Shown here in pieces: positions 506 to 34,268 of a stretch of 64,000 nucleotides of DNA; the stretch's first letter is position 1; every line of letters begins with the position of its first letter. This stretch comes from Podarcis pityusensis (Eukaryota). Under the pieces are notes generated by a model, which was given only the letters and a program-made list of their open reading frames with translations, was not told the origin of the DNA and made no database searches. The translations under genes were made by a program, and so were the position numbers. The stretch lies in assembly GCA_964106645.2 (NCBI GenBank), contig OZ067041.1; one strand, given 5' to 3'.

Positions 506-659
506 ATTTATGAAAATACTGTAGGCGTCTGGTTGGCCATTGTGAGAACAGGATGTTGTGAGAACAGATGGACCTTTGGTCTGATCCAGCAGAATTTTTT
601 TATGTTCTAAGCGTTTGTTGAGCTCCTAAGAATTTAAGCAGTCTTGGCTTCTTTTGCAG

Positions 660-995
660 GTGCAACACAGGTGATTCACGAGCGGTTTCGGAACATCACA
701 GCAGGAGAAAATGTCACTTTGCAATGTCGTCTGGCCAAAAAGCACGACGTTGTTCAGATCACCTGGCAGCAGGAGCAGGGGGAACAAGAGACCAACATGG
801 CTACTTACAGTGAGGCTGGTGGCACTACAATACTGAGTAAATTCAAAAGAAATGTCCACATGTCCCAAAGTGGACTGATGGTTTCTGCTATCACCTTCCA
901 TGCTGTTACACTCAAGGATGAAGGCTGTTACAAGTGCATCTTCAATGTATTTCCCATAGGACCCATCACAGGCAGGACATGTCTCAAGGTCTATG
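660..995 (+). CDS. CD200-like (OX-2-like) paralog, IgV exon
   Basis: ttttgcag|G acceptor and G|gtaag donor, phase 1/1, 336 nt. Translation has IgV hallmarks (VTLQC, ITW, DEGCYKC) and the CD200-family C-terminal motif GCYKCIFNVFPIGPITGRTCLKVY. Confidence 0.93.
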
Positions 996-1332
996 GTAAG
1001 AGTCATATGATCTTAGAGGAAGCCTCCGATCTTACTGGAAGGCCAACAATGCCATATTATTTCTTTTCAGCAAGCACATTTGTACTTGAAAGGGCAACGT
1101 TTCCTACATCAACCCTTCCCATGCTCTCAGATCAGCAGAGGGGGCTCTCTCTTTTTTACATCCAATGGCAATGACAGATACAGCCTTCCCTTGGTGGTGC
1201 CTTGTACTTATGAGTATACCAAGACCTCTTGACATTTCAGCACCAAGTGAAAGATGTACCTGCTTTCTCAGGCTTCTTAGTTTTTAATTAGCAGTTACAA
1301 AGACATTTTAACTAGCTTCTTTTGTTTTAAAG

Positions 1333-9401: not shown

Positions 9402-9524
9402 TATAGAATTAAAGAGTTGGAAGGGACCACAAGAATCATCTAGTCCAACCACCTTCAATGCAAGACTATTTTGCCCAAATCTTTGCCCAAAGATTAAGAG
9501 TCTCATGCTCTACCAACTGAGCTA
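9402..9524 (-). mobile_element. tRNA-Lys-headed SINE with CR1-like tail
   Basis: The minus strand reads tagctcagttggtagagcatgagactcttaatct (tRNA-Lys CTT 5' half), then ggttggactagatga..gtcccttccaactc. Confidence 0.65.
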
Positions 9525-10283
9525 CAGTCTTTACAGAATCTTTTTAATTTGTCAACTTCTCAACCCAAGCCTTTCAAAGCTGAACAGATTTATTGGGGAA
9601 GTGAGATCCCAGAAATGTCTTTCTTTTTCTTTTTTTGTTAAACATGATAGCGTCCTATTCCTCATTTGGCATCTCTTGAGATTTGCTATACACAAGAGCC
9701 CAAAAAATGAGCAGTTGAGAGATTCAGAAGCAAAAATAATACTATGATAATAGTTGGAATAATTTTTTGCATTTTATTTTTTTACGTTTTTCTTAATTTT
9801 TGACATTAACATAACAATAACAAAGAAATAAACAAGGGAAGAGACCAAGGCTGGGCAATACATTTTTGCACCTGAGTCAAACCAGAAAATGGCTGAGTTT
9901 GGTTTGAACCAGGGGTCAATTTCTCTTGCAAAACCTATTTCCAAACTGTGAAAAGTGTGGAATGAATGGATGAGAGAAATATTTTGTGAACAATTCAGAA
10001 ATGAAGATGGGATCAGTGCCCGATTTAGGGTATCATAGGATGATTTCACCGCAAGGGGCACTAAGCCGAGGGCACACAAAATTATAATAAATAAAAAAGG
10101 AATTATTGTGTAAATAATAAATATTTAAGTGGAGGACACCAAATTTTGTCCTTGCCATAGGAAATGTCCAGGGGTTTGGGGGGTATTTATTGGGGGGGGT
10201 GGCTCAGGTGTGGGCAGCTTGGGTGCAGGCTGCTCTGCATGCCATGGCTGCTGCCAGCCTGAGCCAGCAAAAGAGGCCTGCAT

Positions 10284-10578
10284 GAGAGCCAGTGTGGTGT
10301 AGTGGTTAAGAGCGATAGACTCACAATCTGGGGAACCGGGTTCGCGACTCCACTCCTCCACATGCAGCTGCTGGGTGACCTTGGGCTAGTCACGCTTCTT
10401 TGAAGTCTCTCAGCCCCACTCACCTCACAGAGTGTTTGTTGTGGGGGAGGAAGGGAAACAAGAATGTTAGCCACTTTGAGACTCCTTCGGGTAGTGATAA
10501 AGTGGGATATCAAATCCAAACTCTTCTTCTTCTTCTTCTTCTTCTTCTTCTTCTTCTTCTTCTTCTTCTTCTTCTTCT
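10284..10578 (+). mobile_element. tRNA-derived SINE with (CTT)n tail (Squam3/MIR-like)
   Basis: gagagccagtgtggtgtagtggttaagagc (A box), ggttcgcgactcc (B box), CORE-like body, long (CTT)n tail. Confidence 0.85.
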
Positions 10579-10750
10579 CCTCTTTCTCCCATTCGGTCTG
10601 GTAGCATCTCAGGCTGTCCTCTTTTTGTTCTTCAAGATATGGCAACTATATATATCCTGTATGTGAACTTCGTGCAAGGAAATCAGGAAGAAAGCTCGAT
10701 AAACCAGTCATCTAGGAGCTCTAAGAGCAGCAATCAAATTTGTGTTCCTT

Positions 10751-12585: not shown

Positions 12586-12597
12586 ATGCGTCCCAAG
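12586..12597 (+). CDS. CD200: CD200 exon 1 (MRPK)
   Basis: agcATG CGT CCC AAG|gtaaga: 12 coding nt, phase 0, matching the 4-codon first exon (MERL) of human CD200 as I recall it. Confidence 0.75.
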
Positions 12598-12972
12598 GTA
12601 AGATGCTTGCTGTGATGCCAGTCCAAGGCACAAGCTTGGGGATTTGTCTCTGAACATAGGGAGAAAGTAAAGAGAAAGTGCCTGCATGTTCTCAAATGAG
12701 GCTGAAATTGGTGTTTGCTTAAATCGGTCCAAAGCCGTACTGCCTGAATTCAATTTGCCTCCGGCATTCAATTAGCTCAAGAGTAGTGGCGCAATTAGTT
12801 TTAGCCTCTGGATTCAAATAGGCTTACGAGGGGCACATCTCACTTTAGATAGTCATGCATGGTGTGCTCACTTCAAAATGTGGTAATCCAAGATTGCTGC
12901 ATTTGGAAGCCCTTCTGCTCAGCTGCCTGGAGTGGGGCCCAGCCCTGCCCTGGTGATGCCATTGCTCAGGAG

Positions 12973-13409
12973 CAGGGCCAGATTAAGGTTTGATGAGGCA
13001 CTAAGCTACTGAAGGTAATGGGGCCCTTTATATGTCCAGCTGTCCTTTGTCAACAATAAATTGTCGCTGTTTTTTTGTGTTGAATATATGCTATACGGTA
13101 ATTGATGGACCTAATAGATATCTAAAGCCATTTGCACATAACGAAATAGGTATTTTATCAAAGTAATTGTTGAACTAAAATACAATTAAGAAGTATATTA
13201 ATAGTGAAATAATTACTAAGCTCTAACTTAAAATGATTTTTTATTCATAACAAACTTAACAATGCAAACACATTGTCATTTGGCAATAACAAAAGTTCCT
13301 TTAGAAACACAATTTACCCTTTTTTTTTCCTTTAATTTTTTTTGGGGGGGCCCAAGAGAGTGGGGGCCTAAGCTATAGTTTGTTTAGCTTATACATAAAT
13401 TTGGCACTG
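12973..13409. mobile_element. hAT non-autonomous element
   Basis: TIRs cagggccagatt / aatttggcactg and perfect 8-bp TSD CTCAGGAG. Confidence 0.85.
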
Positions 13410-14799
13410 CTCAGGAGAAGCACAAAGGTGCTTTTATGACAGCAATGTTCCACATGCTTAACTGAAAGGGAAATCTTACTGAACTGCGTGAGATTCAGGG
13501 TGCTTCTAGGTGGGGACCTAGTAATGCAAACAGGTATTTGACTACTGGGTTTCCCACCCCCACCCCCCAAAAAGACTGAATATGGATTAAAACTGAGGGG
13601 CAGATATGGGGAGAGGGGAATATGAGAAAAATGTTGTGTGGTTGCAGCAAAAACAATGGCACACATGAGAATCGCCAATCCCACACTCTTGCTTATAAGT
13701 AAGATCATGTTTATGTATAGGATTATTTTCACACTTTGGCAAGAAAAAAAAGAAAAGAAAAGCCATCATCCTTGTCTTCTAGTGAATGTAATAGGAATAT
13801 TTGAAGCATGAACATGAGAAATGCAGAACAGGATTTGAGTTCCATGGAGCCTGATCCTATTCTTTCTTATGCAGAAGCAAATCCTACTGTGTTCAATGGG
13901 GCTAGGTCACAGATAAATGTGCAACAGAGTTGCAACCTTTTTGTTTTTGAATCCTTTTGGTGCTATCTGTGTGTATGTGTGAATACTGTTAATGTGGGGT
14001 AGAAACTAATGAAGACCACAAATTTTAGACAGGTTATACCCTTGGGGATGATGTTGTAATATTAGTAAGTCTGCGTGACTCATGTAGTGGTTTCCTATGT
14101 TGAACAGGCTCTGTGCAGTTTAGATTTCAAGCATGACTGTTTATGGTACTAAAATCCATCAACCCCAACTTCTCATCATTTCCAAGGGTTATATCATTAC
14201 TGTATTATTCTGGGTGCTATTTCCATAACGTCACTAACCTAGTTACTGGCAGGAGATTTCACATATAAATCTCCTGGGTCTGCACTCAAAATCACTGCTG
14301 TGGTCAGAAATTCTTATCCCATTCATTAATATGCACTGCATGGGTTTAATTCTGATCTATTATTGTGGTTTCAATTGCTTTTTATGTAAATTCTTGACTT
14401 TATGATTAGGTTTGGAGTGAGATGGTTCTATATTTTTTATTGTTGTGACATTTCAATTTGTTAGTCACATTGGGTTTCTTTGAAAATTAAGCAGCACATA
14501 CATTTTATTTTAAAAATACATGAACTGCAAGCTGTGTAAATAAATTGCTGTTTTTATCTACTATTTAACTGGCCCAATTATGACAAAAAAATGTGATTAA
14601 AGTGTGTTATCTGGTAAGTAATCTGCATGCAGGTATGGTTTCAAATGTGCACCTACAGAGGAAAGTTTTAAAAGCTTAGAGGACTCACAGAAAAAGACAC
14701 TCTCTCCAAATCTAGGTTCAAAAGCTGATGTTGGGAAGTCAAATGAAACTATCTTTAAGTGAGGAAATGGCTGGACATTTATAATATAAACAGCGAAGT

Positions 14800-14955
14800 G
14801 TCTTGTAGCACCTAAAAGATACATCCATTTATCTCCCGTACACTTCCAAACACCAGGAACCACTTCATAGGATGCATTTGCATCTATTTGTGGACTCTGA
14901 TCCACAAAAGCTCATGCCATAATAAATTTGGCAGTCTTTAAGATGTCAGAAGGGT
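14800..14955. mobile_element. Degraded Penelope-like fragment
   Basis: ttgtagcacctaaaaga...gtggactctgatccacaaaagctcatgccataataaatttggcagtctttaagatg is a decayed version of the 18108-18296 element. Confidence 0.5.
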
Positions 14956-15956
14956 ATTTTGTTTTGCTTTGTTTCTTTGCTGCAGCATACCTACTTAGAG
15001 ATTGGGTTGGCGTGCAACAATGCTCTCCTAAATTATTTGCATTGCACATTTGACCGTAATGTGTATGGTTCACTTTCTTACAATGTTTAAAAAGATTTAG
15101 AAAACATGGGCAAAAGGAAATAATGGTATTCTTTGGTTTTCATTTTTTCCTTGCCAAGGCATTTTAAATACTGTATGTAAGTTAATTTTATTTAAATCAG
15201 TGTAGGTTATTTACTTGCAGCTTGTTCAGTATGAGAAGGTGGGCTTCGTTCCTAGAAGGCGGTGTAGAGGGTTCGAGTTTACAACACTTTCGATGTGTTA
15301 TACTTTAATATATATTTTTCGACTGGCCCTACCAATAAACATCATTAGAACCATGCTGCAGATGTGCTTTAAGTTCCACTGTCATTAACAAGTCATTGTC
15401 TGCAATCACAGGGCAATAAATCCCTCTGGAATCAGTGGTGATTGTAAACGCATTTTAGTGGGACAAGCCAATGAATGGAAAGAAACTACTTAGCATGATG
15501 CAGTTTACAACCCCCTCTCCAAATAAATCTGTTGGAGGGTCAGTTGTGGTGCTTAATCTGTGCCTTCATCTATGCTGAAGGGGAAAGGTTGCAGTGCAGT
15601 CCCACATTCAATCTCTGGGATCGCCAAGATGGGCTGACCTGACAAGAGATCCCAGCCTCAAAGCCTGGAGAGCTGACAACACTGGATCACCACTGCATTA
15701 GCAGGCAGCTTCTGGTGCCCTTTGTTCAACCTTAATATGTGTAAATAAGCACAGATGTAAAGATCTAATAATTTTCTTCTGAGGGGAACCTAACCTGGGT
15801 GTTGCAGCCAGGAGTTTTGCACTGCTTGGAGAAAGGGATTGATCATGTTTTGACACTGAGCCAATCCAAAAGTTCTATAGGTGGGGATTAATCTATTAGT
15901 GCTCATTCACACATGCACATCACTGCTTGGTGCAAAAGATAGTCAATGTGTCAAGC

Positions 15957-15960
<4 letters not shown>

Positions 15961-15996
<36 letters not shown>

Positions 15997-16007
15997 CGCA
16001 CGCGTGC
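15961..16007. repeat. (TG)n(CG)n alternating purine-pyrimidine microsatellite
   Basis: Direct inspection. Confidence 0.95.
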
Positions 16008-17024
16008 TTGTCATATGAAGGAGAACAAAATGTGTTAGGGTTTTGAGATTCTAGAAATACATTTTGCAATAACACAAATCACATTGCTTGCTTTTCTTTC
16101 TCACTTCTGACATCCTGTTAATCCCTCTCTCTTTATTGTGCCAGCTCTCTTGAGGGAACGTCTTGCCACTGAGATACTGACTAGATTTAGTTTCCATTGA
16201 CCTTAAAGGCATTAACTACCCACTGCTCATTTTGTTTTTCTTTTGAGAAGTAGTTTGCTTGCCCCATTGTTCCTTGTTATTCTTCTCCCAGATGCTTCCT
16301 TCCTTGATGCTGTAGCTGAAATGCTTATCTTCCTTTAAGTTTCCACCCACAACACATCCTTTTCTTAACAATTATCTCATTTCCTTTTGATAATAAGTCT
16401 GTTCCTTAATCATATTTAATCCTTGTCGGTAGCTGGCATAACATAATGATTAGGAGACTGAATTACAGATTGAGATACACCAAGTTTCACTACTGCCATG
16501 TGCTCACTTGGTGATCTTAAACCAGCCTGTAGTATTGTGGGGGAGTTTTAATACTGGTTTACCATAGATAGCTGCTGTAAGGACTACAACTAGAACATGA
16601 ACACGAAGAGCTCGGAATGTATGAAAGCGCTACACATTTTGTGCAGTGTTTTGTGATTTAGAATACAGGGCTTAATTGGAGCCCAGGGGTTTTCTGAGTC
16701 TCATCACCAGAACAACTTCTTCCAATGCTAGGGCCTGGAGTTGAACATGAGAAGTAACAATGTGAAAAAATACTTTCCATGAGCTTCTGAGAAACAACAA
16801 CCAGAGCCCATGCACCAGGGGTTTGTGATAGGCATCTAAGCAATGTGACTAGTTCCAATAGATTATTGGCAGTGGTGAGAGGTAAGGGACTCCCTGATAA
16901 AATTGACAATCTCCAACTGCCGACTCAATCCCAAAATTTACAATCTCAATCTGCTGACTCAGTTCATATTTCTACCAACTCCATCTTCTGACTTAGGCTG
17001 AATAAACATCATACATTTAAAGCA

Positions 17025-17039
<15 letters not shown>

Positions 17040-17055
<16 letters not shown>

Positions 17056-17420
17056 TATTAAATTTGTATGCCACCTTCATCCAAAGATAAGAGGGCAGTT
17101 CACAACATAAAAAATACAAAATGAGAACACAAAATTCAAAATACATAATAACAACGAGAACAAAAGCAAACCAATAACCCTTAGAATGCTAATCAGCCAA
17201 AGGCCTGGTTCTGGAGAAACGTTTCCGCCTGGTGCCTAAAGATATGTAATGAAGGCACCAGACAAGATTCCCTAGGGAGAGCATTCCACAAACAGGGAGC
17301 CCTGCAGAAAGGCTTGTACTTGTGTTGCCACCCTCCGGACCAATCATGAAGGAGGTCCTCAGATGATTATTGCAGAGTCCAAGTTGATTCATATGGAGAG
17401 AGGCTGTCCTTGAGGCACAT
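17040..17420 (-). mobile_element. L2-type LINE 3' fragment
   Basis: (TAA)n tail and ggagagcattccacaaaca..gcagaaaggc motif. Homologous to 47650-48045. Confidence 0.7.
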
Positions 17421-17719
17421 GTCTTCAAAGCACATGACTTTCCCCAAAGAACCATGGGAACTGTAGTTTACACCAGAGAGCTATAACTCCCAGCACCCTG
17501 AACATGCTACAATTCCTGGGATTCTTTGTGGAAATTGATAGGCTTCCGATGCATATTAAATTTATGGTATGTATGCAGCATAGTCCCAATCACTTAGCTA
17601 AATCATGGCTCCCTGTGGTGTGTTCTAAAAACAGTGGTTTAGAAAGCTTCCACACAAGGTTAGCAGGCTGGACTGCCACTGGCCCTCCTGAAATTTAAGA
17701 ATCAAAACCCACTACATTA

Positions 17720-17855
17720 GGGATAACCAATGTTGTGCCCTACAGATGTTGTAGGACTGCAACTCCCTTCATCCCTGACCACTGGCCGTGCTTACTGAGT
17801 CTGATGGGAGTTGGAAGTCCAACAACATTTGGGTAGCACCACATTGCCAGCTCCT
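17720..17855. repeat. Dispersed ~130-bp hairpin MITE family (ggactacaactccc/gggagttg)
   Basis: Similar copies at about 20308, 22307, 33168, 42285, 55190 and 57425. Confidence 0.65.
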
Positions 17856-18107
17856 GCATTGCATGATAAGCTCCTCTACCAAATTTCTACTCTATGCAAG
17901 GAGAAGAAGTTTAATAAAAAAAACCAACAACACGGCCCTGTTTCCTCTTTATCTGTTGATGGGGCATTCTCAGATTTTACAGACTTCATTTCATAAACAG
18001 AAAACACTTCTGCTAGGAAATCCCATGAAACCAATGAGGATCACATGTAATCATTTTGAATGTTTGTACATCATGGCACAGAAATATACATGCACTGGGA
18101 AACTAAA

Positions 18108-18296
18108 TAAAAAAATCCTTCCAGTAGCACCTTTAAGACCAACTAAGTTAGTTCTTGGTATGAGCTTTCGTGTGCAAGCACACTTCTTCAGATACTTCAG
18201 ATGGTGTATCTGAAGAAGTGTGCTTGCACACGAAAGCTCATACCAAGAACTAACTTAGTTGGTCTTAAAGGTGCTACTGGAAGGATTTTTTTATTT
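18108..18296. mobile_element. Palindromic Penelope-like element fragment (91-bp perfect inverted repeat) with TSD
   Basis: 18105-18195 is the exact reverse complement of 18206-18296 (10-nt loop). Direct repeat TGGGAAACTAAA at 18096-18107 and 18297-18308. The gtagcacctttaagaccaac..agctttcgtg..cacttcttcagat motif is typical of reptile Penelope termini. Confidence 0.8.
18202..18246 (+). ncRNA. Minimal type I hammerhead ribozyme motif (Penelope type)
   Basis: gtat-CTGAAGA(18210-16)-a-gtgtgc tt gcacac-GAAA(18232-35)-gc-TC-atac: core boxes, stem II, palindromic AGCT stem III, stem I gtat/atac. A mirror copy lies on - at about 18155-18199. Confidence 0.7.
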
Positions 18297-18693
18297 TGGG
18301 AAACTAAAGCCTATCATAGCTTCCCAGGTTGTACATGCTGAAAAACACCAGTGAGGTCAAGTCTCATTAGTGACAGTCCATAGGTGGATTTCAACTTCCC
18401 CACTATTTAAAGAAATGGGTAAAGTGCGGTATGTACAATGTGAAGTAGCCTTCAGGCCAATGACCTGCCATTTGTTAGTTCTTAGCTAGACATGGAAAAG
18501 CTTCACTGCTTGTTTTGGGGAGTTTTGTCTGCTATGGCAACATTTTGAAAATCCCCTGATATGGTTGCAGTGGAACAACAGCCTCTATCTTCATTATGCA
18601 CCTAGGCTATACCCAAAATCCAAATAGTAGAGCATTGTAGTGGCAAAAAAGGCTATTGTGTATCTGTAACACATCTCTTTTTTCTATTCCTAG

Positions 18694-18775
18694 TTAAATG
18701 AAGGTCTCTGTTCCCCATGGACTTTCCAGGGCCTGACTCTGTGCATCATATGTATTGTTCTCTGTAGGATAAAGG
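18694..18775 (+). CDS. CD200: CD200 exon 2 (signal peptide)
   Basis: ttttttctattcctag| acceptor, G|gtaagt donor. 82 nt, phase 0 to 1. Encodes LNEGLCSPWTFQGLTLCIICIVLCRIK, with the same length and phase as the human leader exon (IVLC vs VVLC). Confidence 0.88.
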
Positions 18776-18821
18776 GTAAGTCTAACATGATTAGTGCATT
18801 GGGGAAAGTGTAATGACTAGG

Positions 18822-19122
18822 CAAGGGTGGCTCAAGACATTTTGCCACCTGAGGCAATGGACAACATGGTACACACACACACTCTTGATATCGAGTAGCC
18901 AGCTGGACTGACTGCTGAATCCTAATTCAGTACTAGCAATGGGGCACTGCACTGTCCTGGAGGGAGGTCAGCACCATAGTTGTAAGGCTGGAGCCCCACA
19001 GCTCTCATCTCCAACAGTATGGACAGGGATATCAGGAGGAAGAGCTAAGGGCTGCCACCACCTCCCATCTTATGGCACCTGCACCAGTCACCTCATTCTA
19101 CCTAATGGTAGAGCCAGACCTG
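18822..19122. mobile_element. hAT non-autonomous element
   Basis: Decayed TIRs and 8-bp TSD TGACTAGG/TGACTATG, 46 nt after the CD200 exon 2 donor. Confidence 0.6.
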
Positions 19123-19244
19123 TGACTATGAGCCAGTAGACCAGCAAGTGTGGCTGGCAGAGGGCTATGGAGAGTCTTGTGCTGCTGTGAGCAGGATGGG
19201 CTTTTATTTTGAGTCAAAGAAATGTATTTTTTTGGCATCTGTCT

Positions 19245-19465
19245 GTCTCAGGAGACAATGGAGGAGCACGCTTTGAGGGATGAAGTCAAACTGTTGGAAG
19301 GTTGCAGCACCTGCTGTGGCTGTAGAGACCAATGCAGGAGAGATATGTTTTGTTGCAGGTCAGGCAGATGAAGGCATCTGGTTGTGCTGCTACAAATGAA
19401 CCATAGTGTTTCTTTTCTCTGTGCTCCTCCCAGTGGCCTTTCATCTTCTGGTCACTGCACAGACA
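19245..19465 (-). mobile_element. RTE-clade LINE 3' fragment
   Basis: FICLTCNKTYLSCIGLYSHSRCC zinc-finger-like ORF end, typical of RTE elements. Confidence 0.7.
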
Positions 19466-19760
19466 CACACAGAGCTGCCTTGTGAGGTTAAGTAATGTAT
19501 GCAGCAACCCTCTTCCCCAAATTGTTCCTACCATGAATTTCAGAAAGGCTTCCTTTTCCCTCCACCTATCCAGTGAAAGGTTTTTAAAAAATGAAAGAAA
19601 AATATTTTGGAATTAGCAGCCCAGTTCTAATCTGTTCATGGTTGCTAGAAGTGCAGAACAGGAATTTTTGCATAAATAAATATTTTCCTTGGATCTAGAC
19701 CAAGGGATTTGTAAGCATAAGATACGAGAGGTGATTATTAATTATTTTGTCTTGCCGCAG

Positions 19761-20087
19761 GTGCCATATTGACAAGTGACAGAGACGTGGAGCTGGGCGG
19801 CAACGCTACTTTGAGATGTACCCTAACAGAATCTCTTCCAACTGTTCAAGTTACATGGCAGCAAGAGGTTAATAAAAACGTTGTAAATTTGGCAGCATAT
19901 TACAACAACCAAATTCCAAATATTAATGACCGATACAAAGGTCGAGTCAATTTAACAATTTTAGAACTCAATGACACTGCCATCAGCTTCTGGAATGTTA
20001 GCACCCAAGAAAATGGTTGTTACCGATGCATATTTAACATATTTCCTCTAGGATCCAATAGCAAAAAAACTTGTCTTTCTGTTTACG
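19761..20087 (+). CDS. CD200: CD200 exon 3 (IgV)
   Basis: cttgccgcag|GT acceptor, G|gtgagt donor, 327 nt. Encodes ATLRC..VTW..YKGRVNLT..ISFWNVS..GCYRCIFNIF..CLSVY. Confidence 0.95.
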
Positions 20088-21073
20088 GTGAGTCATTTCA
20101 TATTAAAATAGCTAGAGCAGGGCATTTCTTCAAATATGCTCCTTTGATAATGAAGCAATACAACACACACCATTATCTCCCCCCTGTTCCAGGGGCGCAG
20201 GACTTGCCCAAGTTTGGTTTCCTTAGGAAGGGTGTTACAAGAGCCCTACAGCATTTCCTAATACATATAACTACCGATTGAGTATAATTGGAACTACAGC
20301 TTAAACCACAGGTGGTGAACCTGTGGTCCTTCAGTTGATGTTGGACTACAACTCCTACGATCCATGAGCACGCTAGCTGCAGATTATGAGAGCAAAACCT
20401 GATAGTCTAAGATTACAATATCCACAGCAGATCGGAGGCAGTATATTTCCAGTTGCCCAGTTCCTGCCTGTGGACTTCCTGTGGGCATCTGATTGGCTAC
20501 TGTGAGAGCAGAATGCTGAACTTGATAGGTCATTGATCCATTAGGTTCTTATATTCTTCTATGCTGATATGGGGAGTGGAACAGAATACTAAGAAGCTCC
20601 GGGGACCAAAAGCTCAGCTTGGTGTCTGATCTCCATCTGCCTCAAAACTGCAGGCTTCTCCTTTCGTTTCCCTGTATATACAGAGACCTGGATCACAACA
20701 TTTGTTAACTGTGCAGGAGGATCTGTCCCCTTCTCTCATAATTCTTCCGATTAAGGACATTCCCAAATCTTTTGTTAGCAATGGGCTAAGCAGTTTGTTG
20801 CTATGGCAACATATTCCTGAACAATTAACAAGTCCAAGGTTCTGGCCTGTTATGCCACAGAGAAACTCACACTAACGAAAACCCCTTTGTAAAACTGATT
20901 ATAAATCAGCCCACTGTGTAATAATGCTACAACATATGTTTTGGTTTTCAGCCAGAATATTGCAGTGTGGGACATTGGGCTTGTCCACATGTATGGTGTG
21001 TTGAATAACACACTATAGCACACTACAGTTGAAGGATGATTGCTCAAAGTTAACATAAGTTTCCTACCATATA

Positions 21074-21436
21074 GTAGGAAAGTGATAGTCAAGGGACCCC
21101 TGACCATTAGGTCCAGTCATGGCCTACTCTGGGGTTGCGGCGCTCATCTCTCTTTATTGGCTAAGGTAGCCGGCGTACAACTTCCGGGTCATGTGGCCAG
21201 CATGACTAAGCCACTTCTGGGAAACCAGAGCAGTCCACGGAAACGCCGTTTACCTTCCCACCGGAGCGGTACCTATTTATCTACTTGCACTTTGACATGC
21301 TTTCAAACTGCTAGGTTGGCAGGAGCAGGGACCGAGCAACGGGAGTTCACCCCATTGCGAGGATTCGAACCGCCAACTTTCTGATCGCCAAGTCCTAGGC
21401 TCTGTGGTTTAACCCACAGCACCACCCATGTCCCTT
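21074..21436 (-). mobile_element. Sauria SINE (copy 1 of tandem pair)
   Basis: Full-length reverse-complemented Sauria SINE flanked by TTCCTACCATATA. Confidence 0.9.
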
Positions 21437-21449
21437 TTCCTACCATATA

Positions 21450-21797
21450 AGGTAAAGGTAAAGGGACCCCTGACCATTAGGTCCAGTCGTGACCGACTCT
21501 GGGGTTGCGGCGCTCATCTCGCTTTATTGGCCAAGGGAGCCGGCGTACAGCTTCCGGGTCATGTGGCCAGCATGACTAAGCCGCTTCTGGCGAACCAGAG
21601 CAGCGCACGGAAACACCGTTTACCTTCCTGCTGGAGCGGTACCTATTTATCTACTTGCACTTCGTGCTTTCGAACTGGTAGGTTGGCAGGAGCAGGGACC
21701 GAGCAACGGGAGTTCACCCCGTCGCAGGGATTCGAACCACTGACCTTCTGATCGGCAAGTCCTAGGCTCTGTGGTTTAACCCACAGCGCCACCCGCG
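21450..21797 (-). mobile_element. Sauria SINE (copy 2 of tandem pair)
   Basis: aggtaaaggtaaaggg tail through ccacagcgccacccgcg head, flanked by TTCCTACCATATA. Confidence 0.92.
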
Positions 21798-21946
21798 TTC
21801 CTACCATATAGTCTGCCTCTAATTCAACAGTTTGCAGTTTGCCCTGCTGAGTCCCTCACTGATACAGTAGCATCTTTTCATCTTCCTTTTATTGCCCACC
21901 TGCTGTCCTTATGGTGAAGCATTTTGTGCCGTCATTTATGTCACAG

Positions 21947-22210
21947 GCCGCCTCAACACATTTTTACACTACAGCATCTCTGATGGGCGCTTGAATGCCA
22001 CCTGCTCAGCAACGGGCTTCCCACGTCCCAACATCACATGGGTTGTGCCAAGAGGCCTGAAGGAGGAACACGAGATCACAAATCCCAATGGAACAGTATC
22101 GGTCATAAGCAATATCCTTGTAAATGCCTCAGATAGCCATTCTGGACAAGAGATGATCTGCAAGGTTACACACAGGGGGAAAGAGATGGATCTCAAGGTA
22201 CCAAGAAAAG
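21947..22210 (+). CDS. CD200: CD200 exon 4 (IgC)
   Basis: tcacag|GC acceptor, G|gtaagt donor, 264 nt. LHYSISDGRLNATCSATGFPRPNITWVVPR...PNGTVSVIS..GQEMICKVTH matches mammalian CD200 (LHYKFSEDHLNITCSAT...PNGTTSVTS..GKEVICQVLH). Confidence 0.95.
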
Positions 22211-23035
22211 GTAAGTGAGCAAAGCACTCGGTGCCTGTCATCCTCCTAAAAGGTAGCAAACTTTCACCTTAAAAATCTTGTATTTTCTTTTCTTCCATTC
22301 TACAAGGGATGGTGAACCTGCAGCCCTCCATATGTTACTGACCTACAGTTTTCCACCATCATTGATCATTGTCCATGATACCTGGGGGCGATGAGAACTG
22401 GAGTATAACAACCTCTGGAGTGTCACAAGTTTGCCATGCCTGATGTAAAAGAAAAGAAAAAATTCAGACTAAAGAGAGGCTTTAGTGCAGGGATGTGGAA
22501 CAGGTTCCAGGTGGCAGTTTTTGGCAGTTGAGTGGGGCTACCCACCTGTCCACCCCTGGATCCTTTAATACTGTATATTTCACACTTCCCCTTATCAAGT
22601 AATAATTATCATTTTATTCTATTGTTACATGCATGCATTCTTCCTTATTTTTCCTTCCTTCAAGATGGATTTGGGCATGTGCTTTTAGTCTCCCTCTGAA
22701 ATTCTTTACTCTTACCTCTTTCATAAACTGAAACACACTCACTGGTTTTCAGCGAATGCATTTTGAACATATTCTTAGAAGTTATTTCAACCTCTAGTCA
22801 TCTCACCCACTACAGCAAATTAAGGACCTCACTTTCAATGTAGAATTGTGATTTTATTCTATATTACATTATTATATGATATTATATTATAATATAAATC
22901 ATTATTATATTATATTATATTATATTATGTTATGTTATGTTGTTATGTTATGTTATGTTATGTTATTGCATTTATATTTATATTACATAGACTCCTCTCC
23001 ATACTGTCAGCAATTATTTTCTTTCCTCCATATAG

Positions 23036-24452: not shown

Positions 24453-24688
24453 TCTCTGGAACTTTCTTTTTCCTGCACGCAAACAGGCACGCACACACAT
24501 ACAAGCAGAAACTGGGCCACCAGCTGAAAGAGACTTTTCAGAGGTGGAATCGCTTCCCTTACAAATCAAGGCAAATTAACTGTGGTGATTTAAAATTAGA
24601 CTTTTGTAAAAATGCATATTATTCTATTAGGATTTTGAATGCCCCCCCCCCAGGTTTAAATGAAAATTCTATGAAAAATGTATATGTA

Positions 24689-24932
24689 CAGTGGTACCTC
24701 GGGTTACATGCACTTCAGGTTACATATGCTTCAGGTTACAGACTCTGCTAACCCAGAAATAGTGCTTCAGGTTAAGAACTTTGCTTCAGGATGAGAACAG
24801 AAATCGTGCTCCGGTGGCGCGGTGGCAGCAGGAGGCCCCTGGTGCTTGAACCTGGTGCTTCAGGTTAAGAACAGTTTCATGTTAAGAATGGACCTCCAGA
24901 ACGAATTAAGTACTTAACCCGAGGTACCACTT
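24689..24932. mobile_element. Tc1/mariner (Tigger-like) MITE
   Basis: TA|cagtggtacctcgggtta...taacccgaggtaccact. Confidence 0.85.
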
Positions 24933-25626
24933 TATTGGAAATGAATTTATTTTTTAAAAAGGAAGTTCTAACTGGAAAATTAAATGTTCATCAACATACA
25001 AAATCAACTTTAAAAATGTAGGGCAGGAGTAAAAAATTTCAGCTGACCTATCCCAAATCCTATATCTTGACAAGCTCTCTACTTTCAAATTTCCCCCTCA
25101 GCTTTCTTATGAGCCAACAATGTTGTGCCATACCTCCACTGCCCAGTCTCTTGTCTGGAACCATATCCTGCTTGAAATTCCTGGAAACATCAGATTAAGA
25201 CAGATAAGGACAGTCATAGGGAGTGTCTACCATAACTTAAAGCCAAGTATCATAAGGAGGGATTTTGTTTCCTGTGCTAAACAAAAGAAATGGACACTTA
25301 TAAATTCTTATCTAATATTCAGAGATGTTTTCGTAGGGTAGCCTATCAAGGTTTTTACAGCACTGAGGAAATAGGAATGAAACTACAAATTAAGGGCATG
25401 TTGTTCTTGACGTGAGAACATATTCTTCTCTTGCTGGGGCTTTAGGCTGTGGCAATTTTTTTAGGAGATCATCATGGCAGCCAGAGCCCATGGAGTGTCC
25501 AAAAATGAAGGCAGTTGTGTTGCTCCATTGTGTATGTGTGTAAACATGCAATCACACACGCATGCACACAAAAGCATAATATCCAGTTTATTAGGGATCA
25601 GCCTGGCTGAAACATCTGCATAATTA

Positions 25627-25868
25627 CAGTGGTACCTCAGGTTAAGTACTTAATTTGTTCCGGAGGTTCGTACTTAACCTGAAACTGTTCTTAACCTAAA
25701 GCACCACTTTAGCTAATGGGGCCTCCTGCTGCTGCTGCGCCACTGGAGCAAAATTTCTGTTCTCATCCTGAAGCAAAGTTCTTAACCTAAAGCACTATTT
25801 CTGGGTTAGCGGTGTCCGTAACCTGAAGCGTATGTAACCTGAAGCGTATGTAACCCGAGGTACCACTG
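25627..25868. mobile_element. Tc1/mariner (Tigger-like) MITE
   Basis: TA-flanked, same family as 24689-24932, opposite orientation. Confidence 0.88.
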
Positions 25869-27002
25869 TATCTGGACATAAGCTCTATTGAACTCAGCAG
25901 CGCTTCCTGCTGAAGGCATATAAGATGATGTGTGTCAGAGGTGATTCATACATTAATAAACAATAGTAATGATAATAATAAGTTCAACGTCTGAAACTCA
26001 CAGCAAGGGTAGCTAGCTATATCTTCATAAAGAAATCTGCTCTTGTACATCTAGTACTTTCTTCTTGTAAGGAAATTGACTTGTCAAAGGATTTCTTGAA
26101 ACATCTTAACATTCAGACAAGTGCGGAGCAAGAGCAACACCCAAACCTGCCCTTTCAGCTCTCAAAAGTCCTGTTTCCTATATAGACTGGATCCCTTCCA
26201 AACAGTAGCAGCCAAGCCCCAAACAGGATATATTGCACAAGAACCCTGACCTTTCCCTTCACCTTCATAGTTCCATATTTTCTCTTGCAGCTATGGAGTG
26301 GCTTTTTATTCTGAAACATTTTTGATTGTCACACAAGTGAGGGCTGCACACCACACACTTCCTCCTGCAATGTGGGTTTGTGGTTGTGGAGCAGGAGTAG
26401 TTCTGAGAAAAAAAGCAACGTTTCTCTCAAGAAATAAGTATTCCTCAAACACTCATGTGCAATCTATTCCTGTATTCCCCCTCCCCCTTTCTTCAGCAAC
26501 CTGGGTCCTATTTAAATAGGGCTTGTTACAGAAAATGCAAGTTTAGTACTGTTTCTGCCATGACTATGTAGAGCCCATTGCCATACCCGGCTGGTGTGAA
26601 ATTTTTGAAACACTTGGAGCAGTCATCTCATTCTTTCCTCATACACTATATATATGAAGATTCAGGAAGAAAAGTGAGAATAGACTACATTCATCATACA
26701 CAATGGGAAAAAACTATGAAATGGCTCCCTGACAGTTGAAACACGCCTGACATTGTCATTTTTTACCCATTTACCCAGGTTTTAGGTGGGTACAGTGATG
26801 CTCATCTTTTAGTTGCTGGATGAGCATTTTAAGAATTTTGTATTGTACATCTTTTTCTAATTTGGCTCATAATTTTAGATTTTACTTCACTATATATTAA
26901 GTTGTTAAGTTACCTTGTATCATGGCAACAAATATATATATAATATTGATAAAATAAAATAATTAAAACTACTCTATCTATCTGTTCTCTTTTAGGAATC
27001 TA

Positions 27003-32685: not shown

Positions 32686-34118
32686 TATGTATTTGTGTGT
32701 GGACGTATGAAGAATAAAACTGTGAGAATCTATTAGGCATTGTTAAATTTATCAACAACACATTCAAGTTCAATATAAAGCAAGCTCTCATGGGCTTTTC
32801 TGAAAAAAAAATTTCTTGGATTTCTAGGTTCATTATTGCTTTGAAATGTGGAAAATATTTGATAAGCGTCAAAGGAAACACTGATGAGTAATTGTGTGGG
32901 GCTGGGCATTAAAAGTGCAGGTCCTTCTAAAGTTAAAATCTCTGGGGATTTTAGCTTTGTATTTTTATTTTTTATCTGCTTGGTTGAACTGTTTTTGGTC
33001 ATCTGTCATGGAAATATTGAGAGCTTTTTGGATTATGTTGGCACTGAATGTGGGAAATGTAGATTCAGCAAGTCCATTGAACAAACAAACAGACCCTTAT
33101 TGCCTCAAATCTAATTGTGAACACATAATAGCTAGTTTAGAAGAGGGAAACATTTTGTCCAGCTCCAGCATGGGACTGGGGAACCTTTGGCCCTCCAGAT
33201 GTTGCTAGACAACAGCTCCCACCTTTCCTGACCAATGGCCCTTCCTGGTTGGAGTTGGTGGGACTTGGAGACTACCAACATCTGAAGGGCCACAGGTTCT
33301 CCAGCTATGCTCTAGCAGCATCATGCCCATCCTTCTTGGGTGGGTTTGGCCCCTTACCTAATAGTGCTCTTGAGCATATACCTTTATCAGAGGACACTTG
33401 CAGCTGAGGCAAAACTTTCCCACTTCCATGACACTGGGTGCTCTCATCTCTGCTATTATGGATTTCCTGACTGGAAGGGTAGTAACAAAATCCAACCACC
33501 TTCTTTGGTTCCTCTGTTAGCAACCACATTTGATTACCAGGCAAGGCTGGATGTAGACCACAGATGGAGAACCTCAGGCCTCTTTAAATGGCCTTCTAGA
33601 TTCTTCTCAAGGCATACACCATCCTGAGCCACATCCCTCACCCTCCTTTGCACCCTCCTTCAGTGTTTTCGGCTGGCTGGAATATGTCTGTGAATTTGGG
33701 TAATGCTCCCTCCTTGTCTGGATGGAAGACAAAGAAGGGTTTGTGAGTGAGTAGAAACTTAGCCACTGAACGAGGGTAAAATTCATATTTGTTTATCAGC
33801 CCTTTTGCCTCAGGCCTCACCTGCCATTGGATGCGGCCCCTGGAACATTGGCTAGAGGAAATGAGGAACATTGGCTGAAAAGGTTCCCACCCTGGTGCAC
33901 TTCACGCAAACTTCCACAAATGCCATGTTATCAAGCAAACAACCACATCTACCGCCAACTCTCACTTCTCCTGTCCAACCAAAGACCTCTGCATTGGTCT
34001 GGGGTGGGATTAAAATGGAGAAATAGCAGTGAAGACAGTGACTAGTGCTTCAGTTCTCCAGCAGGGAATGCCCTCTCATCTGGAGCCATAAGTACAGAGA
34101 TAGAGTCTCCCTTCAAAT

Positions 34119-34268
34119 GCTGTAGGGTAATGGGTCAGTGTGTCTGGCTGTTAACCAGAAGGTTGGTGGTTCGAGACCACCCAGGGATGGCTGTGGGCAA
34201 GATTCCTGCATTGCAGGGGGTTGCACTAAATGACTCCCAGGGTCCCTTCCAATTTTATGATTTTGTAA
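34119..34268 (+). mobile_element. tRNA-Asn-headed SINE with CR1-like tail
   Basis: ggctgttaaccagaaggttggtggttcgagaccacccaggga resembles tRNA-Asn(GTT). It is followed by a gggggttgcactaaatga..gtcccttccaa..atgatt CR1-type 3' end. Confidence 0.7.

What the first reader, a model, noticed from the sequence alone, without database searches (positions are those of the whole stretch)
18096..18308. Perfect palindromic retroelement carrying a hammerhead ribozyme on each strand, in CD200 intron 1
Seen: two 91-bp arms (18105-18195, 18206-18296) are exact reverse complements around a 10-nt loop and are flanked by a 12-bp TSD (TGGGAAACTAAA), so the whole hairpin inserted as one unit, probably recently. The right arm contains gtat-CUGAAGA-a-[gugugc uu gcacac]-GAAA-gc-UC-auac, a minimal type I hammerhead with palindromic AGCU stem III and predicted cleavage after C18239; the left arm encodes the same motif on the minus strand. 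Known: Penelope-like retroelements carry such minimal, dimer-dependent hammerheads. Inference: this is a non-autonomous, orientation-independent mini-Penelope in which either transcript carries a ribozyme preceded by its own antisense. That arrangement would lock the ribozyme off in the host pre-mRNA while creating a 91-bp dsRNA (possible ADAR/Dicer substrate) about 400 nt upstream of CD200 exon 2.
Basis: partly seen in the sequence, partly recalled or inferred. Interest (0 to 1): 0.8.

Follow-up and report, generated by a model that had tools for sequence, protein, structure and literature searches.

The report
Penelope retroelement fold-back insertion, lizard intron
This is a real, recent, 189-bp head-to-head double copy of the ribozyme-bearing end of a Penelope-like retrotransposon, inserted into intron 1 of a lizard CD200-like gene. 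It is a known by-product of how these elements integrate, not a new kind of mobile element.

Summary
There are two 91-nt arms that are 100% complementary, a 10-nt spacer and a 12-bp target-site duplication. Each strand carries one minimal type-I hammerhead motif.

New evidence:
- The orthologous sites in Podarcis raffonei and Zootoca vivipara are empty and hold a single TGGGAAACTAAA. The whole hairpin is therefore a genuine one-step, lineage-specific insertion and not an assembly artefact.
- Solo copies of the same sequence occur in Zootoca and in an agamid. They lie 180-600 nt downstream of GIY-YIG endonuclease ORF remnants, which ties the arms to a Penelope-like element (PLE).
- Helices I and II of the hammerhead covary between lacertid and agamid copies.
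- Homology to annotated lacertid OX-2/CD200-like proteins confirms exon 2 and places the insert in intron 1, 398 nt upstream of exon 2.

Inverted, TSD-flanked pseudo-LTR pairs are a published structural outcome of PLE integration. A PLE protein also cuts and extends both DNA strands in vitro. The arms lack the upstream TATA-like box, so the insert is most likely dead on arrival rather than a propagating "mini-Penelope".

In the host pre-mRNA the 91-bp duplex (-167 kcal/mol) would out-compete the ribozyme fold (about -6 kcal/mol).

The scan's first-stage notes (unchecked) list about ten similar PLE palindromes elsewhere in this genome. Read-level tests could not be run. Verdict: new member of a known kind, low-to-moderate interest.

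The parts
18096..18107 (.). Left copy of the 12-bp target-site duplication TGGGAAACTAAA. Its last AAA is also complementary to the TTT at the end of the right arm (3-nt junction microhomology).
   Evidence: direct repeat D5. A single copy is present at the empty orthologous sites in P. raffonei and Zootoca.
18108..18195 (-). Left arm: PLE 3'-terminal segment, sense on the minus strand (91 nt if the shared AAA at 18105-18107 is counted). Its 3' end faces outward (left) and its 5' end faces the centre.
   Evidence: Homologous to solo copies L002 23020-23131 and 13591-13694.
18158..18195 (-). Minimal type-I hammerhead motif of the left arm, read on the minus strand.
   Evidence: Descriptor scan; exact mirror of the right-arm motif.
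18196..18205 (+). 10-nt spacer TTCAGATGGT. Most likely the native 5' continuation of the right arm, making that arm 101 nt. With 18208-18214 it forms a small hairpin over the ribozyme core.
   Evidence: Both Zootoca solo copies have GT directly before GTATC, as does the plus-strand reading and unlike the minus-strand reading. The hairpin appears in the fold.
18206..18296 (+). Right arm: PLE 3'-terminal segment, sense on the plus strand. It ends at the T-rich ...ATTT site without the optional 'tail'.
18206..18243 (+). Minimal type-I hammerhead motif: stem I 4 bp, CUGAAGA, unpaired A, 6-bp helix II, GAAA, palindromic GC insert, UC. Predicted cleavage is after C18239.
   Evidence: Helices I and II covary with agamid copies. 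The architecture matches PMC4209133 and the Poseidon_Ac hammerhead.
18297..18308 (.). Right copy of the 12-bp target-site duplication.
12586..12597 (+). Context: coding part of exon 1 (ATG CGT CCC AAG, then GTAAG) of the CD200-like gene.
   Evidence: orthology to P. raffonei L001 10001-10012; the proteins start MRPK.
18694..18775 (+). Context: exon 2 (82 nt, signal-peptide part) of the CD200-like gene. Intron 1 is 12598-18693 and holds the insert 398 nt upstream of this exon.
   Evidence: Its translation is identical to residues 5-31 of the Podarcis OX-2 membrane glycoprotein-like proteins P0002 and P0003. Splice signals are visible.
19769..22218 (+). Context: V-set exon (within 19769-20281) and C2-set exon (within 21892-22218) of the same gene.
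   Evidence: Pfam V-set and C2-set_2. The best solved-structure match for both is CD200, 4bfi_B.

Best explanation
The feature is a dead-on-arrival insertion made in one integration event by an active Penelope-like retrotransposon (PLE) of lacertid lizards. Two copies of the element's ribozyme-bearing terminal segment are joined head to head, 5' ends at the centre and 3' ends outward, and are flanked by a 12-bp target-site duplication.

Shown:
- It is an insertion. Orthologous sites in two related species are empty.
- The arms belong to a repeat that elsewhere follows a GIY-YIG endonuclease ORF remnant.
- The repeat carries a hammerhead whose helices covary.

Inferred mechanism (about 55% of this explanation): the PLE ribonucleoprotein nicked both target strands 12 bp apart. 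Each 3' end primed reverse transcription at the same internal, tail-less site of the RNA. Both cDNAs ran to about the RNA 5' end, reaching 91 and 101 nt. That end lies just downstream of the pseudo-LTR TATA-like box. One polymerase then jumped end to end onto the other cDNA. This gives near-equal arms, a blunt junction and a 10-nt 'spacer' that is simply the longer arm.

Alternative route (about 35%): one cDNA folded back and primed on itself.

Consequences. The insert has no promoter and only one sense ribozyme per strand, so it should be neither mobile nor self-cleaving. In the CD200-like pre-mRNA it should fold into a 91-bp perfect duplex. Any effect of that duplex on editing, small RNAs or splicing is unproven.
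For: - Palindrome and TSD.
- Empty sites with a single 12-mer and 97-99% identical flanks in P. raffonei, and likewise in Zootoca.
- Solo homologues in Zootoca. Z1 continues upstream through a TATA-like CATATAAA 29 nt before stem I, a 3' UTR and a GIY-YIG ORF remnant (Pfam E=4.4e-4).
- Z2 starts at about the same position as the window's arms and carries a 38-nt tail that the window arms lack.
- Agamid copies lie 520-600 nt after endonuclease ORF remnants whose nearest Atlas clusters are eukaryotic GIY-YIG proteins. They have a TATA-like box at a similar distance.
- Covariation: 4 of 10 pairs compensatory, 98% of cells paired against 11-64% when slid.
- Literature: inverted pseudo-LTRs with TSDs and palindromes at the inverted junction, head-to-head being the most frequent (PMC3846280); an inverted 5'-truncated copy and an optional 30-40 bp tail (PMC8557442); the Anolis PLE protein cleaves and extends both strands from the same internal RT start, and its ribozyme is dispensable for insertion (PMC11167929).
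- Folding: whole unit -167.1 kcal/mol, z=-31.6, against -6.0 to -6.8 for the ribozyme fold.
Against: - No full-length element with a reverse-transcriptase domain was recovered, so the PLE assignment rests on endonuclease remnants, architecture and literature.
- The GIY-YIG Pfam hit is below the curated cut-off (20.9 against 22.6 bits). Longer agamid ORF pieces gave no Pfam hit.
- The transcript start is predicted only from TATA spacing, not measured.
- One locus cannot separate the two-strand priming route from self-priming.
- Variable arm lengths at other loci come only from unchecked first-stage notes.
- No read data could be examined.
Confidence: 0.8

Rival explanations
1. Same PLE origin, but the fold-back arose by self-priming. 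A single cDNA of about 101 nt snapped back on itself and copied its own first 91 nt, and the hairpin strand was then joined to the other target end through the AAA/TTT microhomology.
For: PMC3846280 interprets palindromes at inverted PLE junctions as self-priming. Equal arms are automatic under this route. The native sequence has a 7-bp inverted repeat exactly at the fold-back point. There is a 3-nt microhomology at the left junction.
Against: Pairing of that native hairpin would predict a different centre: a 5-nt loop, with the copy restarting at arm position 82. The observed restart is at position 91 with no base-paired primer end (reading). That fits an end-to-end jump onto a free 3' end better.
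Confidence: 0.3
2. One reading: a distinct non-autonomous palindromic 'mini-Penelope' that is transcribed from either strand and propagates as a unit, with the ribozyme regulated by its own antisense.
For: The unit is TSD-flanked and perfect. Unchecked notes list several similar palindromes in this genome. Non-autonomous PLE derivatives with hammerheads exist (bioRxiv 10.64898/2026.07.22.740005).
Against: - The arms exclude the TATA-like box seen upstream in the longer copy.
- A perfect RNA hairpin of -167 kcal/mol would bury the 3' region where reverse transcription must start.
- The solo copies in Zootoca are not palindromic.
- The other palindromes are noted with different arm lengths (58 to 107 nt) and with or without spacers.
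- Dimer-type ribozymes need two sense copies (PMC4209133), and each transcript here has one.
Confidence: 0.07
3. Artefact or later DNA-level event: an assembly fold-back, or an inverted duplication of a simple insertion by replication template switching.
For: Perfect palindromes are a known failure mode of assemblies, and PLE structures are hard to assemble (PMC8557442). No reads could be inspected.
Against: The palindrome sits inside otherwise colinear unique sequence. The 12-bp duplication brackets the whole unit exactly, against single-copy empty sites in two species. A later duplication would have to stop precisely at the TSD boundary.
Confidence: 0.04
4. A DNA transposon or MITE with 91-bp terminal inverted repeats, or a hairpin RNA / microRNA-like gene.
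For: It has an inverted-repeat-plus-TSD layout. Rfam long-hairpin microRNA models give E-values down to 5e-23.
Against: The arms are homologous over their whole length to single-orientation copies that follow a PLE endonuclease ORF. A 12-bp TSD and arms that make up nearly the whole unit are not typical of a transposase-mobilised element (own knowledge). All microRNA model scores are far below gathering thresholds, for example 102.6 against 245 bits, and reflect only the perfect hairpin. The locus is absent from sister species.
Confidence: 0.03

Closest known systems
Inverted pseudo-LTR insertions of endonuclease-containing Penelope elements (Adineta vaga Pen2/Pen2a/Pen5/Pen6; PMC3846280) and the 'inverted 5'-truncated copy' layout of PLEs (PMC8557442)
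   Same: Head-to-head inverted terminal segments, a TSD of about 8-12 bp around the whole unit, a palindrome at the inverted junction, an optional 30-40 bp tail, and a hammerhead in the pseudo-LTR.
   Different: Here nothing lies between the two inverted segments. It is the minimal form: two roughly 91-101-nt terminal pieces and no ORF. The host is a lacertid lizard.
Poseidon_Ac (PAc) of Anolis carolinensis (PMC11167929)
   Same: A squamate PLE. The ribozyme architecture is the same: CUGANGA, one unpaired base, 6-bp helix II, GAAA, a 2-nt palindromic insert, UC. Reverse transcription starts internally, which explains tail-less ends. The protein cuts and extends both strands.
   Different: There is no sequence similarity outside the ribozyme core. 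In PAc the ORF starts inside the ribozyme. Here the ribozyme lies about 180 nt after the ORF stop, and the arm's open frame matched no PLE protein. The PAc RT start is AC-rich, whereas here the ends are T-rich.
PLE minimal hammerheads (Cervera & de la Pena 2014, PMC4209133; Lunse et al. 2017, cited in PMC6765202)
   Same: Type I. Helix I of 4-5 bp, long helix II with an unpaired base at its 5' end, a tiny palindromic helix III implying action as dimers. Reported in turtles and snakes.
   Different: This copy faces its own antisense in cis. Activity is not tested.
LINE-1 twin priming inversions
   Same: The second target strand also primes reverse transcription, giving an inverted segment within one TSD-flanked insertion (own knowledge).
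   Different: Twin priming copies different parts of one RNA and yields an inversion, not a palindrome of the same terminal segment.
Non-LTR retrozymes (bioRxiv 10.64898/2026.07.22.740005)
   Same: Short, non-coding, PLE-derived sequences with type-I hammerheads.
   Different: Retrozymes are direct tandem repeats that can dimerise and circularise. This is a single inverted pair.

Membership tests
Penelope-like element (insertion product) | Repeat physically linked to a PLE ORF (reverse transcriptase plus GIY-YIG endonuclease) | tested here: inconclusive
   Homologous copies follow endonuclease ORF remnants in Zootoca and in three Phrynocephalus loci. The Zootoca remnant has a GIY...YIG motif and a Pfam GIY-YIG hit at E=4.4e-4, below the cut-off. 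The Atlas nearest clusters are eukaryotic GIY-YIG proteins, score 0.96. All copies seen are 5'-truncated, so no RT domain was seen.
Penelope-like element (insertion product) | Hammerhead motif in the terminal repeat, of the minimal PLE type | tested here: met
   features as listed in PMC4209133; same layout as Poseidon_Ac.
Penelope-like element (insertion product) | Direct and/or inverted terminal repeats with a TSD around the unit | tested here: met
   Inverted 91-nt arms and a 12-bp TSD. The TSD is proven by empty sites.
Penelope-like element (insertion product) | Optional 30-40 bp 'tail' at an end | tested here: met
   The family has it. Zootoca copy Z2 extends 38 nt beyond the ...ATTTT end and Z1 extends partly. 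Both window arms are the tail-less form.
Hammerhead ribozyme | Catalytic core C3-A9, G12-A14, A15.1-U16.1 and a cleavable H17, in type-I order | tested here: met
   CUGAAGA, GAAA, U, C at 18210-18239; descriptor scan.
Hammerhead ribozyme | Score at or above threshold with curated covariance models (Rfam hammerhead families) | tested here: not met
   No hammerhead family hit at E<=10 on 801 nt or on the 105-nt arm alone. This is as expected for motifs without an intramolecular helix III.
Hammerhead ribozyme | Helices supported by compensatory change | tested here: met
   Two pairs in helix I and two in helix II change on both sides between lacertid and agamid copies. 98.3% of cells are paired. 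This is effectively one two-lineage comparison.
Hammerhead ribozyme | Self-cleavage | not testable with these tools
   Published PLE minimal hammerheads cleave weakly, only as dimers or with element protein.
Non-LTR retrozyme | Head-to-tail tandem repeats, each with a hammerhead | tested here: not met
   There are only two copies, in inverted orientation, and no other copy in 64 kb.
microRNA / hairpin RNA gene | Match to a curated family at its gathering score, and conservation of the locus | tested here: not met
   Best hit is 102.6 bits against a threshold of 245. The locus is absent from P. raffonei and Zootoca.

The most novel reading that the evidence does not exclude
The perfect intronic hairpin, and the similar PLE fold-backs noted elsewhere in this genome, are processed in vivo as endogenous hairpin RNA by ADAR editing or Dicer cleavage. 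The resulting small RNAs would target the active parent PLE family, or would alter inclusion of exon 2 of the CD200-like gene. In that reading, a by-product of two-strand PLE integration would double as a self-made silencing trigger.
Probability: 0.07. Interest if true: 0.6.

Novelty: new member of a known kind. Interest (0 to 1): 0.25.

Why it matters
By itself it is an ordinary, probably neutral, young transposon fragment. Its value is as a clean in vivo footprint of the poorly understood PLE integration step. It has a precise empty site, a 12-bp stagger, both arms starting at the same tail-less site, inner ends 10 nt apart near the predicted transcript start, and a blunt junction. A census of such junctions in lacertid genomes could discriminate two-strand target-primed reverse transcription followed by template jumping from self-priming. 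The only biochemical evidence so far is one in vitro study on an Anolis element. The insert also marks an active PLE family in Podarcis-like lizards, gives a presence/absence marker, and places a 91-bp perfect dsRNA-forming repeat next to an exon of an immune-regulator paralogue.

Tried and rejected
- Rfam. No hammerhead hit. The microRNA-model hits are generic hairpin scores.
- Arm ORF idea. I tested whether the arm's open frame, starting at the ATG in the spacer, is the N-terminus of the PLE protein as in Poseidon_Ac. The word search found nothing. The exhaustive search gave one unrelated repeat protein, P0001. Rejected.
- DNA pattern scans of metagenome and viral contigs for the ribozyme region: 0 hits.
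- Exact-product look-ups of window ORFs over the hairpin: none on record. The P. lilfordi protein is not on record.
- Pfam on longer agamid endonuclease ORF pieces: no hit.
- Lunse et al. 2017 is not held.
- Hammerhead cleavage as the cause of the arm ends is rejected. The cut site is 57 nt from the outer end, whereas the arms are 91 and 101 nt.
- Gene model. Exons were searched separately by reference.

Full report
**1.

The window has two 91-nt arms (18105-18195 and 18206-18296) that are 100% complementary. They are separated by 10 nt (18196-18205) and bracketed by a perfect 12-bp direct repeat, TGGGAAACTAAA, at 18096-18107 and 18297-18308. The left repeat shares its last AAA with the left arm, so the gained DNA is 18108-18296 (189 bp) plus one 12-mer. 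This is the only long perfect inverted repeat in the 64 kb. The arm sequence occurs nowhere else in the window.

**2. It is a real insertion, and a young one**

The V-set exon downstream led to annotated lacertid proteins and, through them, to orthologous DNA.
- In Podarcis raffonei (L001), window 17000-18107 aligns to 15414-16514 at 97.2% and window 18297-19500 aligns to 16503-17701 at 98.8%. The two alignments overlap by exactly the 12-mer.
- The base-level alignment shows a single TGGGAAACTAAA and no trace of the palindrome.
- Zootoca vivipara (L002) is empty in the same way, at 14851-14862.

So the whole hairpin plus a TSD was gained in one event in the lineage of the window's species, after that species split from P. 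raffonei. The window's species is a lacertid about 2% diverged from P. raffonei in non-coding DNA. This argues strongly against an assembly fold-back and against a later duplication of one arm. The zero mismatches between the arms are compatible with a young age but add little on their own.

**3. The ribozyme motif**

The right arm reads as follows:
- stem I: GUAU (18206-09) paired with AUAC (18240-43)
- CUGAAGA (18210-16)
- an unpaired A (18217)
- a 6-bp helix II (18218-23 with 18226-31)
- GAAA (18232-35)
- a palindromic GC (18236-37)
- UC (18238-39)

Cleavage is therefore predicted after C18239. The left arm carries the mirror motif on the minus strand (18158-18195). A descriptor written for this architecture found only these two sites in the window and none in 200 simulated sequences.

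The features match those published for PLE minimal hammerheads: a short helix I of 4-5 bp, a long helix II with an unpaired base at its 5' end, and a minute palindromic helix III that implies dimer action. Such motifs have been reported in turtles and snakes (PMC4209133). The Anolis Poseidon_Ac hammerhead has the same layout.

Rfam's hammerhead models do not score the motif, even on the arm alone. This is expected for motifs without an intramolecular helix III. The strong Rfam hits are long-hairpin microRNA models far below their thresholds.

Independent support comes from relatives. In an alignment with two Zootoca and three Phrynocephalus copies, 98% of cells in helices I and II pair, against 11-64% when the partners are slid. 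Four of the ten pairs changed on both sides between the lacertid and agamid copies. This is essentially one two-lineage comparison, but it shows that the fold is maintained in the parent family.

**4. What the arms come from**

Zootoca L002 holds two single-orientation copies, 88-91% identical to the arm.
- Copy Z1 continues upstream through a TATA-like CATATAAA 29 nt before stem I, then about 145 nt of untranslated sequence, then the end of an ORF. That ORF carries a GIY...YIG motif interrupted by a stop, and it is preceded by a Cys-rich linker. Pfam gives GIY-YIG at E=4.4e-4, just under the curated cut-off.
- Copy Z2 begins within a few nt of where the window's arms end. It extends 38 nt beyond the T-rich ...ATTTT end.

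A search with the Zootoca endonuclease piece found agamid (Phrynocephalus forsythii) ORF remnants. In all three of their loci, a recognisable ribozyme-plus-tail segment lies 520-600 nt downstream. The longest agamid piece has the Cys-rich linker and the GIY-YIG motif by eye. Its nearest Atlas clusters are eukaryotic GIY-YIG proteins (score 0.96), but it gives no Pfam hit.

No copy reached the reverse-transcriptase domain. Membership in the PLEs is therefore very likely but not formally complete.

**5. Which arm is longer, and what the spacer is**

Directly before GTATC, both Zootoca copies have GT. The plus-strand reading of the window (…GGT) agrees with this, and the minus-strand reading (…GAA) does not. 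Z1 also shows TTCAG-T against the window's TTCAGATGGT. The spacer is therefore most simply the native 5' continuation of the right arm, giving 101 nt on the right against 91 nt on the left.

With 18208-18214 this stretch forms a small hairpin over the ribozyme core, seen in the fold of the isolated arm. An unchecked note on another copy in this genome mentions the same kind of competing hairpin.

**6. How it most likely arose**

Several published points bear on this.
- PLE insertions are known for tandem and inverted arrangements.
- In Adineta vaga, inserts flanked by inverted pseudo-LTRs with 8-10 bp TSDs, and palindromes at the inverted junction, are described. Head-to-head is the most frequent form, and these were attributed to self-priming (PMC3846280).
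- The purified Anolis PLE protein cleaves and extends both target strands. It starts reverse transcription at the same internal RNA site on both, and it does not need ribozyme cleavage (PMC11167929).

The locus fits this picture:
- standard target-primed geometry with a 12-bp stagger
- both arms starting at the same tail-less site
- 3-nt (left) and 1-nt (right) overlaps with the target
- inner ends only 10 nt apart
- a blunt centre without filler

The TATA-like box sits 29-33 nt upstream of stem I in Z1, and at a similar distance in the agamid copies. This predicts a transcript start at about arm positions 89-98. Z2 also begins there. I therefore favour the following sub-model, at about 55% within the PLE explanation. 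Two cDNAs, one on each strand, ran to the 5' end of short pseudo-LTR-initiated RNA. One polymerase then jumped end to end onto the other cDNA.

Self-priming of a single cDNA is the main alternative (about 35%). Its weakness is that pairing of the native 7-bp inverted repeat would predict a different centre from the one observed. This reasoning is inference from one locus.

**7. What it does now**

The arms lack the TATA-like box. Each transcript contains one sense ribozyme preceded by its antisense, whereas these ribozymes need two sense copies.
- The full unit folds at -167.1 kcal/mol (z = -31.6).
- The ribozyme-competent fold of the 38-mer is worth -6.0 to -6.8 kcal/mol.

The ribozyme should therefore be silent, and the insert immobile.

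**8. Gene context**

- The V-set and C2-set exons (within 19769-20281 and 21892-22218) have CD200 (4bfi_B) as their best solved-structure match.
- The best database proteins are 'OX-2 membrane glycoprotein(-like)' of Podarcis lilfordi (92%), P. raffonei (91%) and Zootoca (80%).
- Their N-termini read MRPK, followed by a 27-residue stretch identical to the translation of window 18694-18775. That confirms exon 2.
- Exon 1 (ATG CGT CCC AAG, then GTAAG) is at 12586-12597.

The insert thus lies in intron 1 (12598-18693), 398 nt upstream of exon 2. A second CD200-like V exon at 644-1174, together with an upstream 320-residue Ig gene in both relatives, shows that this is one of two tandem paralogues.

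**9. Novelty and score**

The thing is real and neatly documented, but it is a new member of a known kind: the minimal form of the inverted pseudo-LTR insertion already described for PLEs. The 'mini-Penelope' reading is not supported. First-stage notes of this scan (unchecked) list about ten further PLE palindromes in this genome, with arm lengths from about 58 to 107 nt, with and without spacers. If confirmed, that favours a by-product of integration over a propagating unit. Interest: 0.25, mainly as a mechanistic footprint for PLE integration.

Noticed in passing
window 644-1174 (+): A second V-set exon whose best solved-structure match is also CD200 (E=9e-19). Both relatives have a 320-residue Ig gene just upstream of the CD200-like gene. 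The window therefore spans two tandem CD200-like paralogues.
   Followed up: partly
window 24688-24933, 25626-25869 and 2212-2372: Three roughly 160-250-bp MITE-like elements with TACAGTGGTACCTC... terminal inverted repeats. The first two fall in gaps of the alignment to P. raffonei L001, so they appear to be lineage-specific young insertions.
   Followed up: partly
window 10284-10579: A tRNA-like head (GGCCTGCATGAGAGCCAGTG...GTGGTTAAGAGCG) followed by a long (CTT)n run. It is absent from the aligned P. raffonei sequence and is probably a young SINE insertion.
   Followed up: no
window 34116-34189 (+) and 9461-9531 (-): tRNA-like hits: ARAGORN tRNA-Asn GTT at the first, and Rfam tRNA at 35 and 33 bits at both. 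Whether they are genes or SINE heads was not checked.
   Followed up: no
L002 23594-24282 (-): The Zootoca PLE endonuclease ORF remnant is interrupted by stops and by an inserted stretch with internally repeated peptide-like sequence. This copy is old and decayed, although its ribozyme is intact.
   Followed up: no
L003 8195-9466 (+): A 424-residue open segment with LINE-type reverse-transcriptase motifs lies directly upstream of the agamid PLE fragment. These look like nested or adjacent retroelements.
   Followed up: no
window 18116-18285: Rfam plant microRNA hairpin models (MIR2646, MIR8562, MIR1222) give E-values down to 5e-23 on this animal palindrome while staying far below their gathering scores. 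E-values from long-hairpin models are not evidence of kinship.
   Followed up: yes
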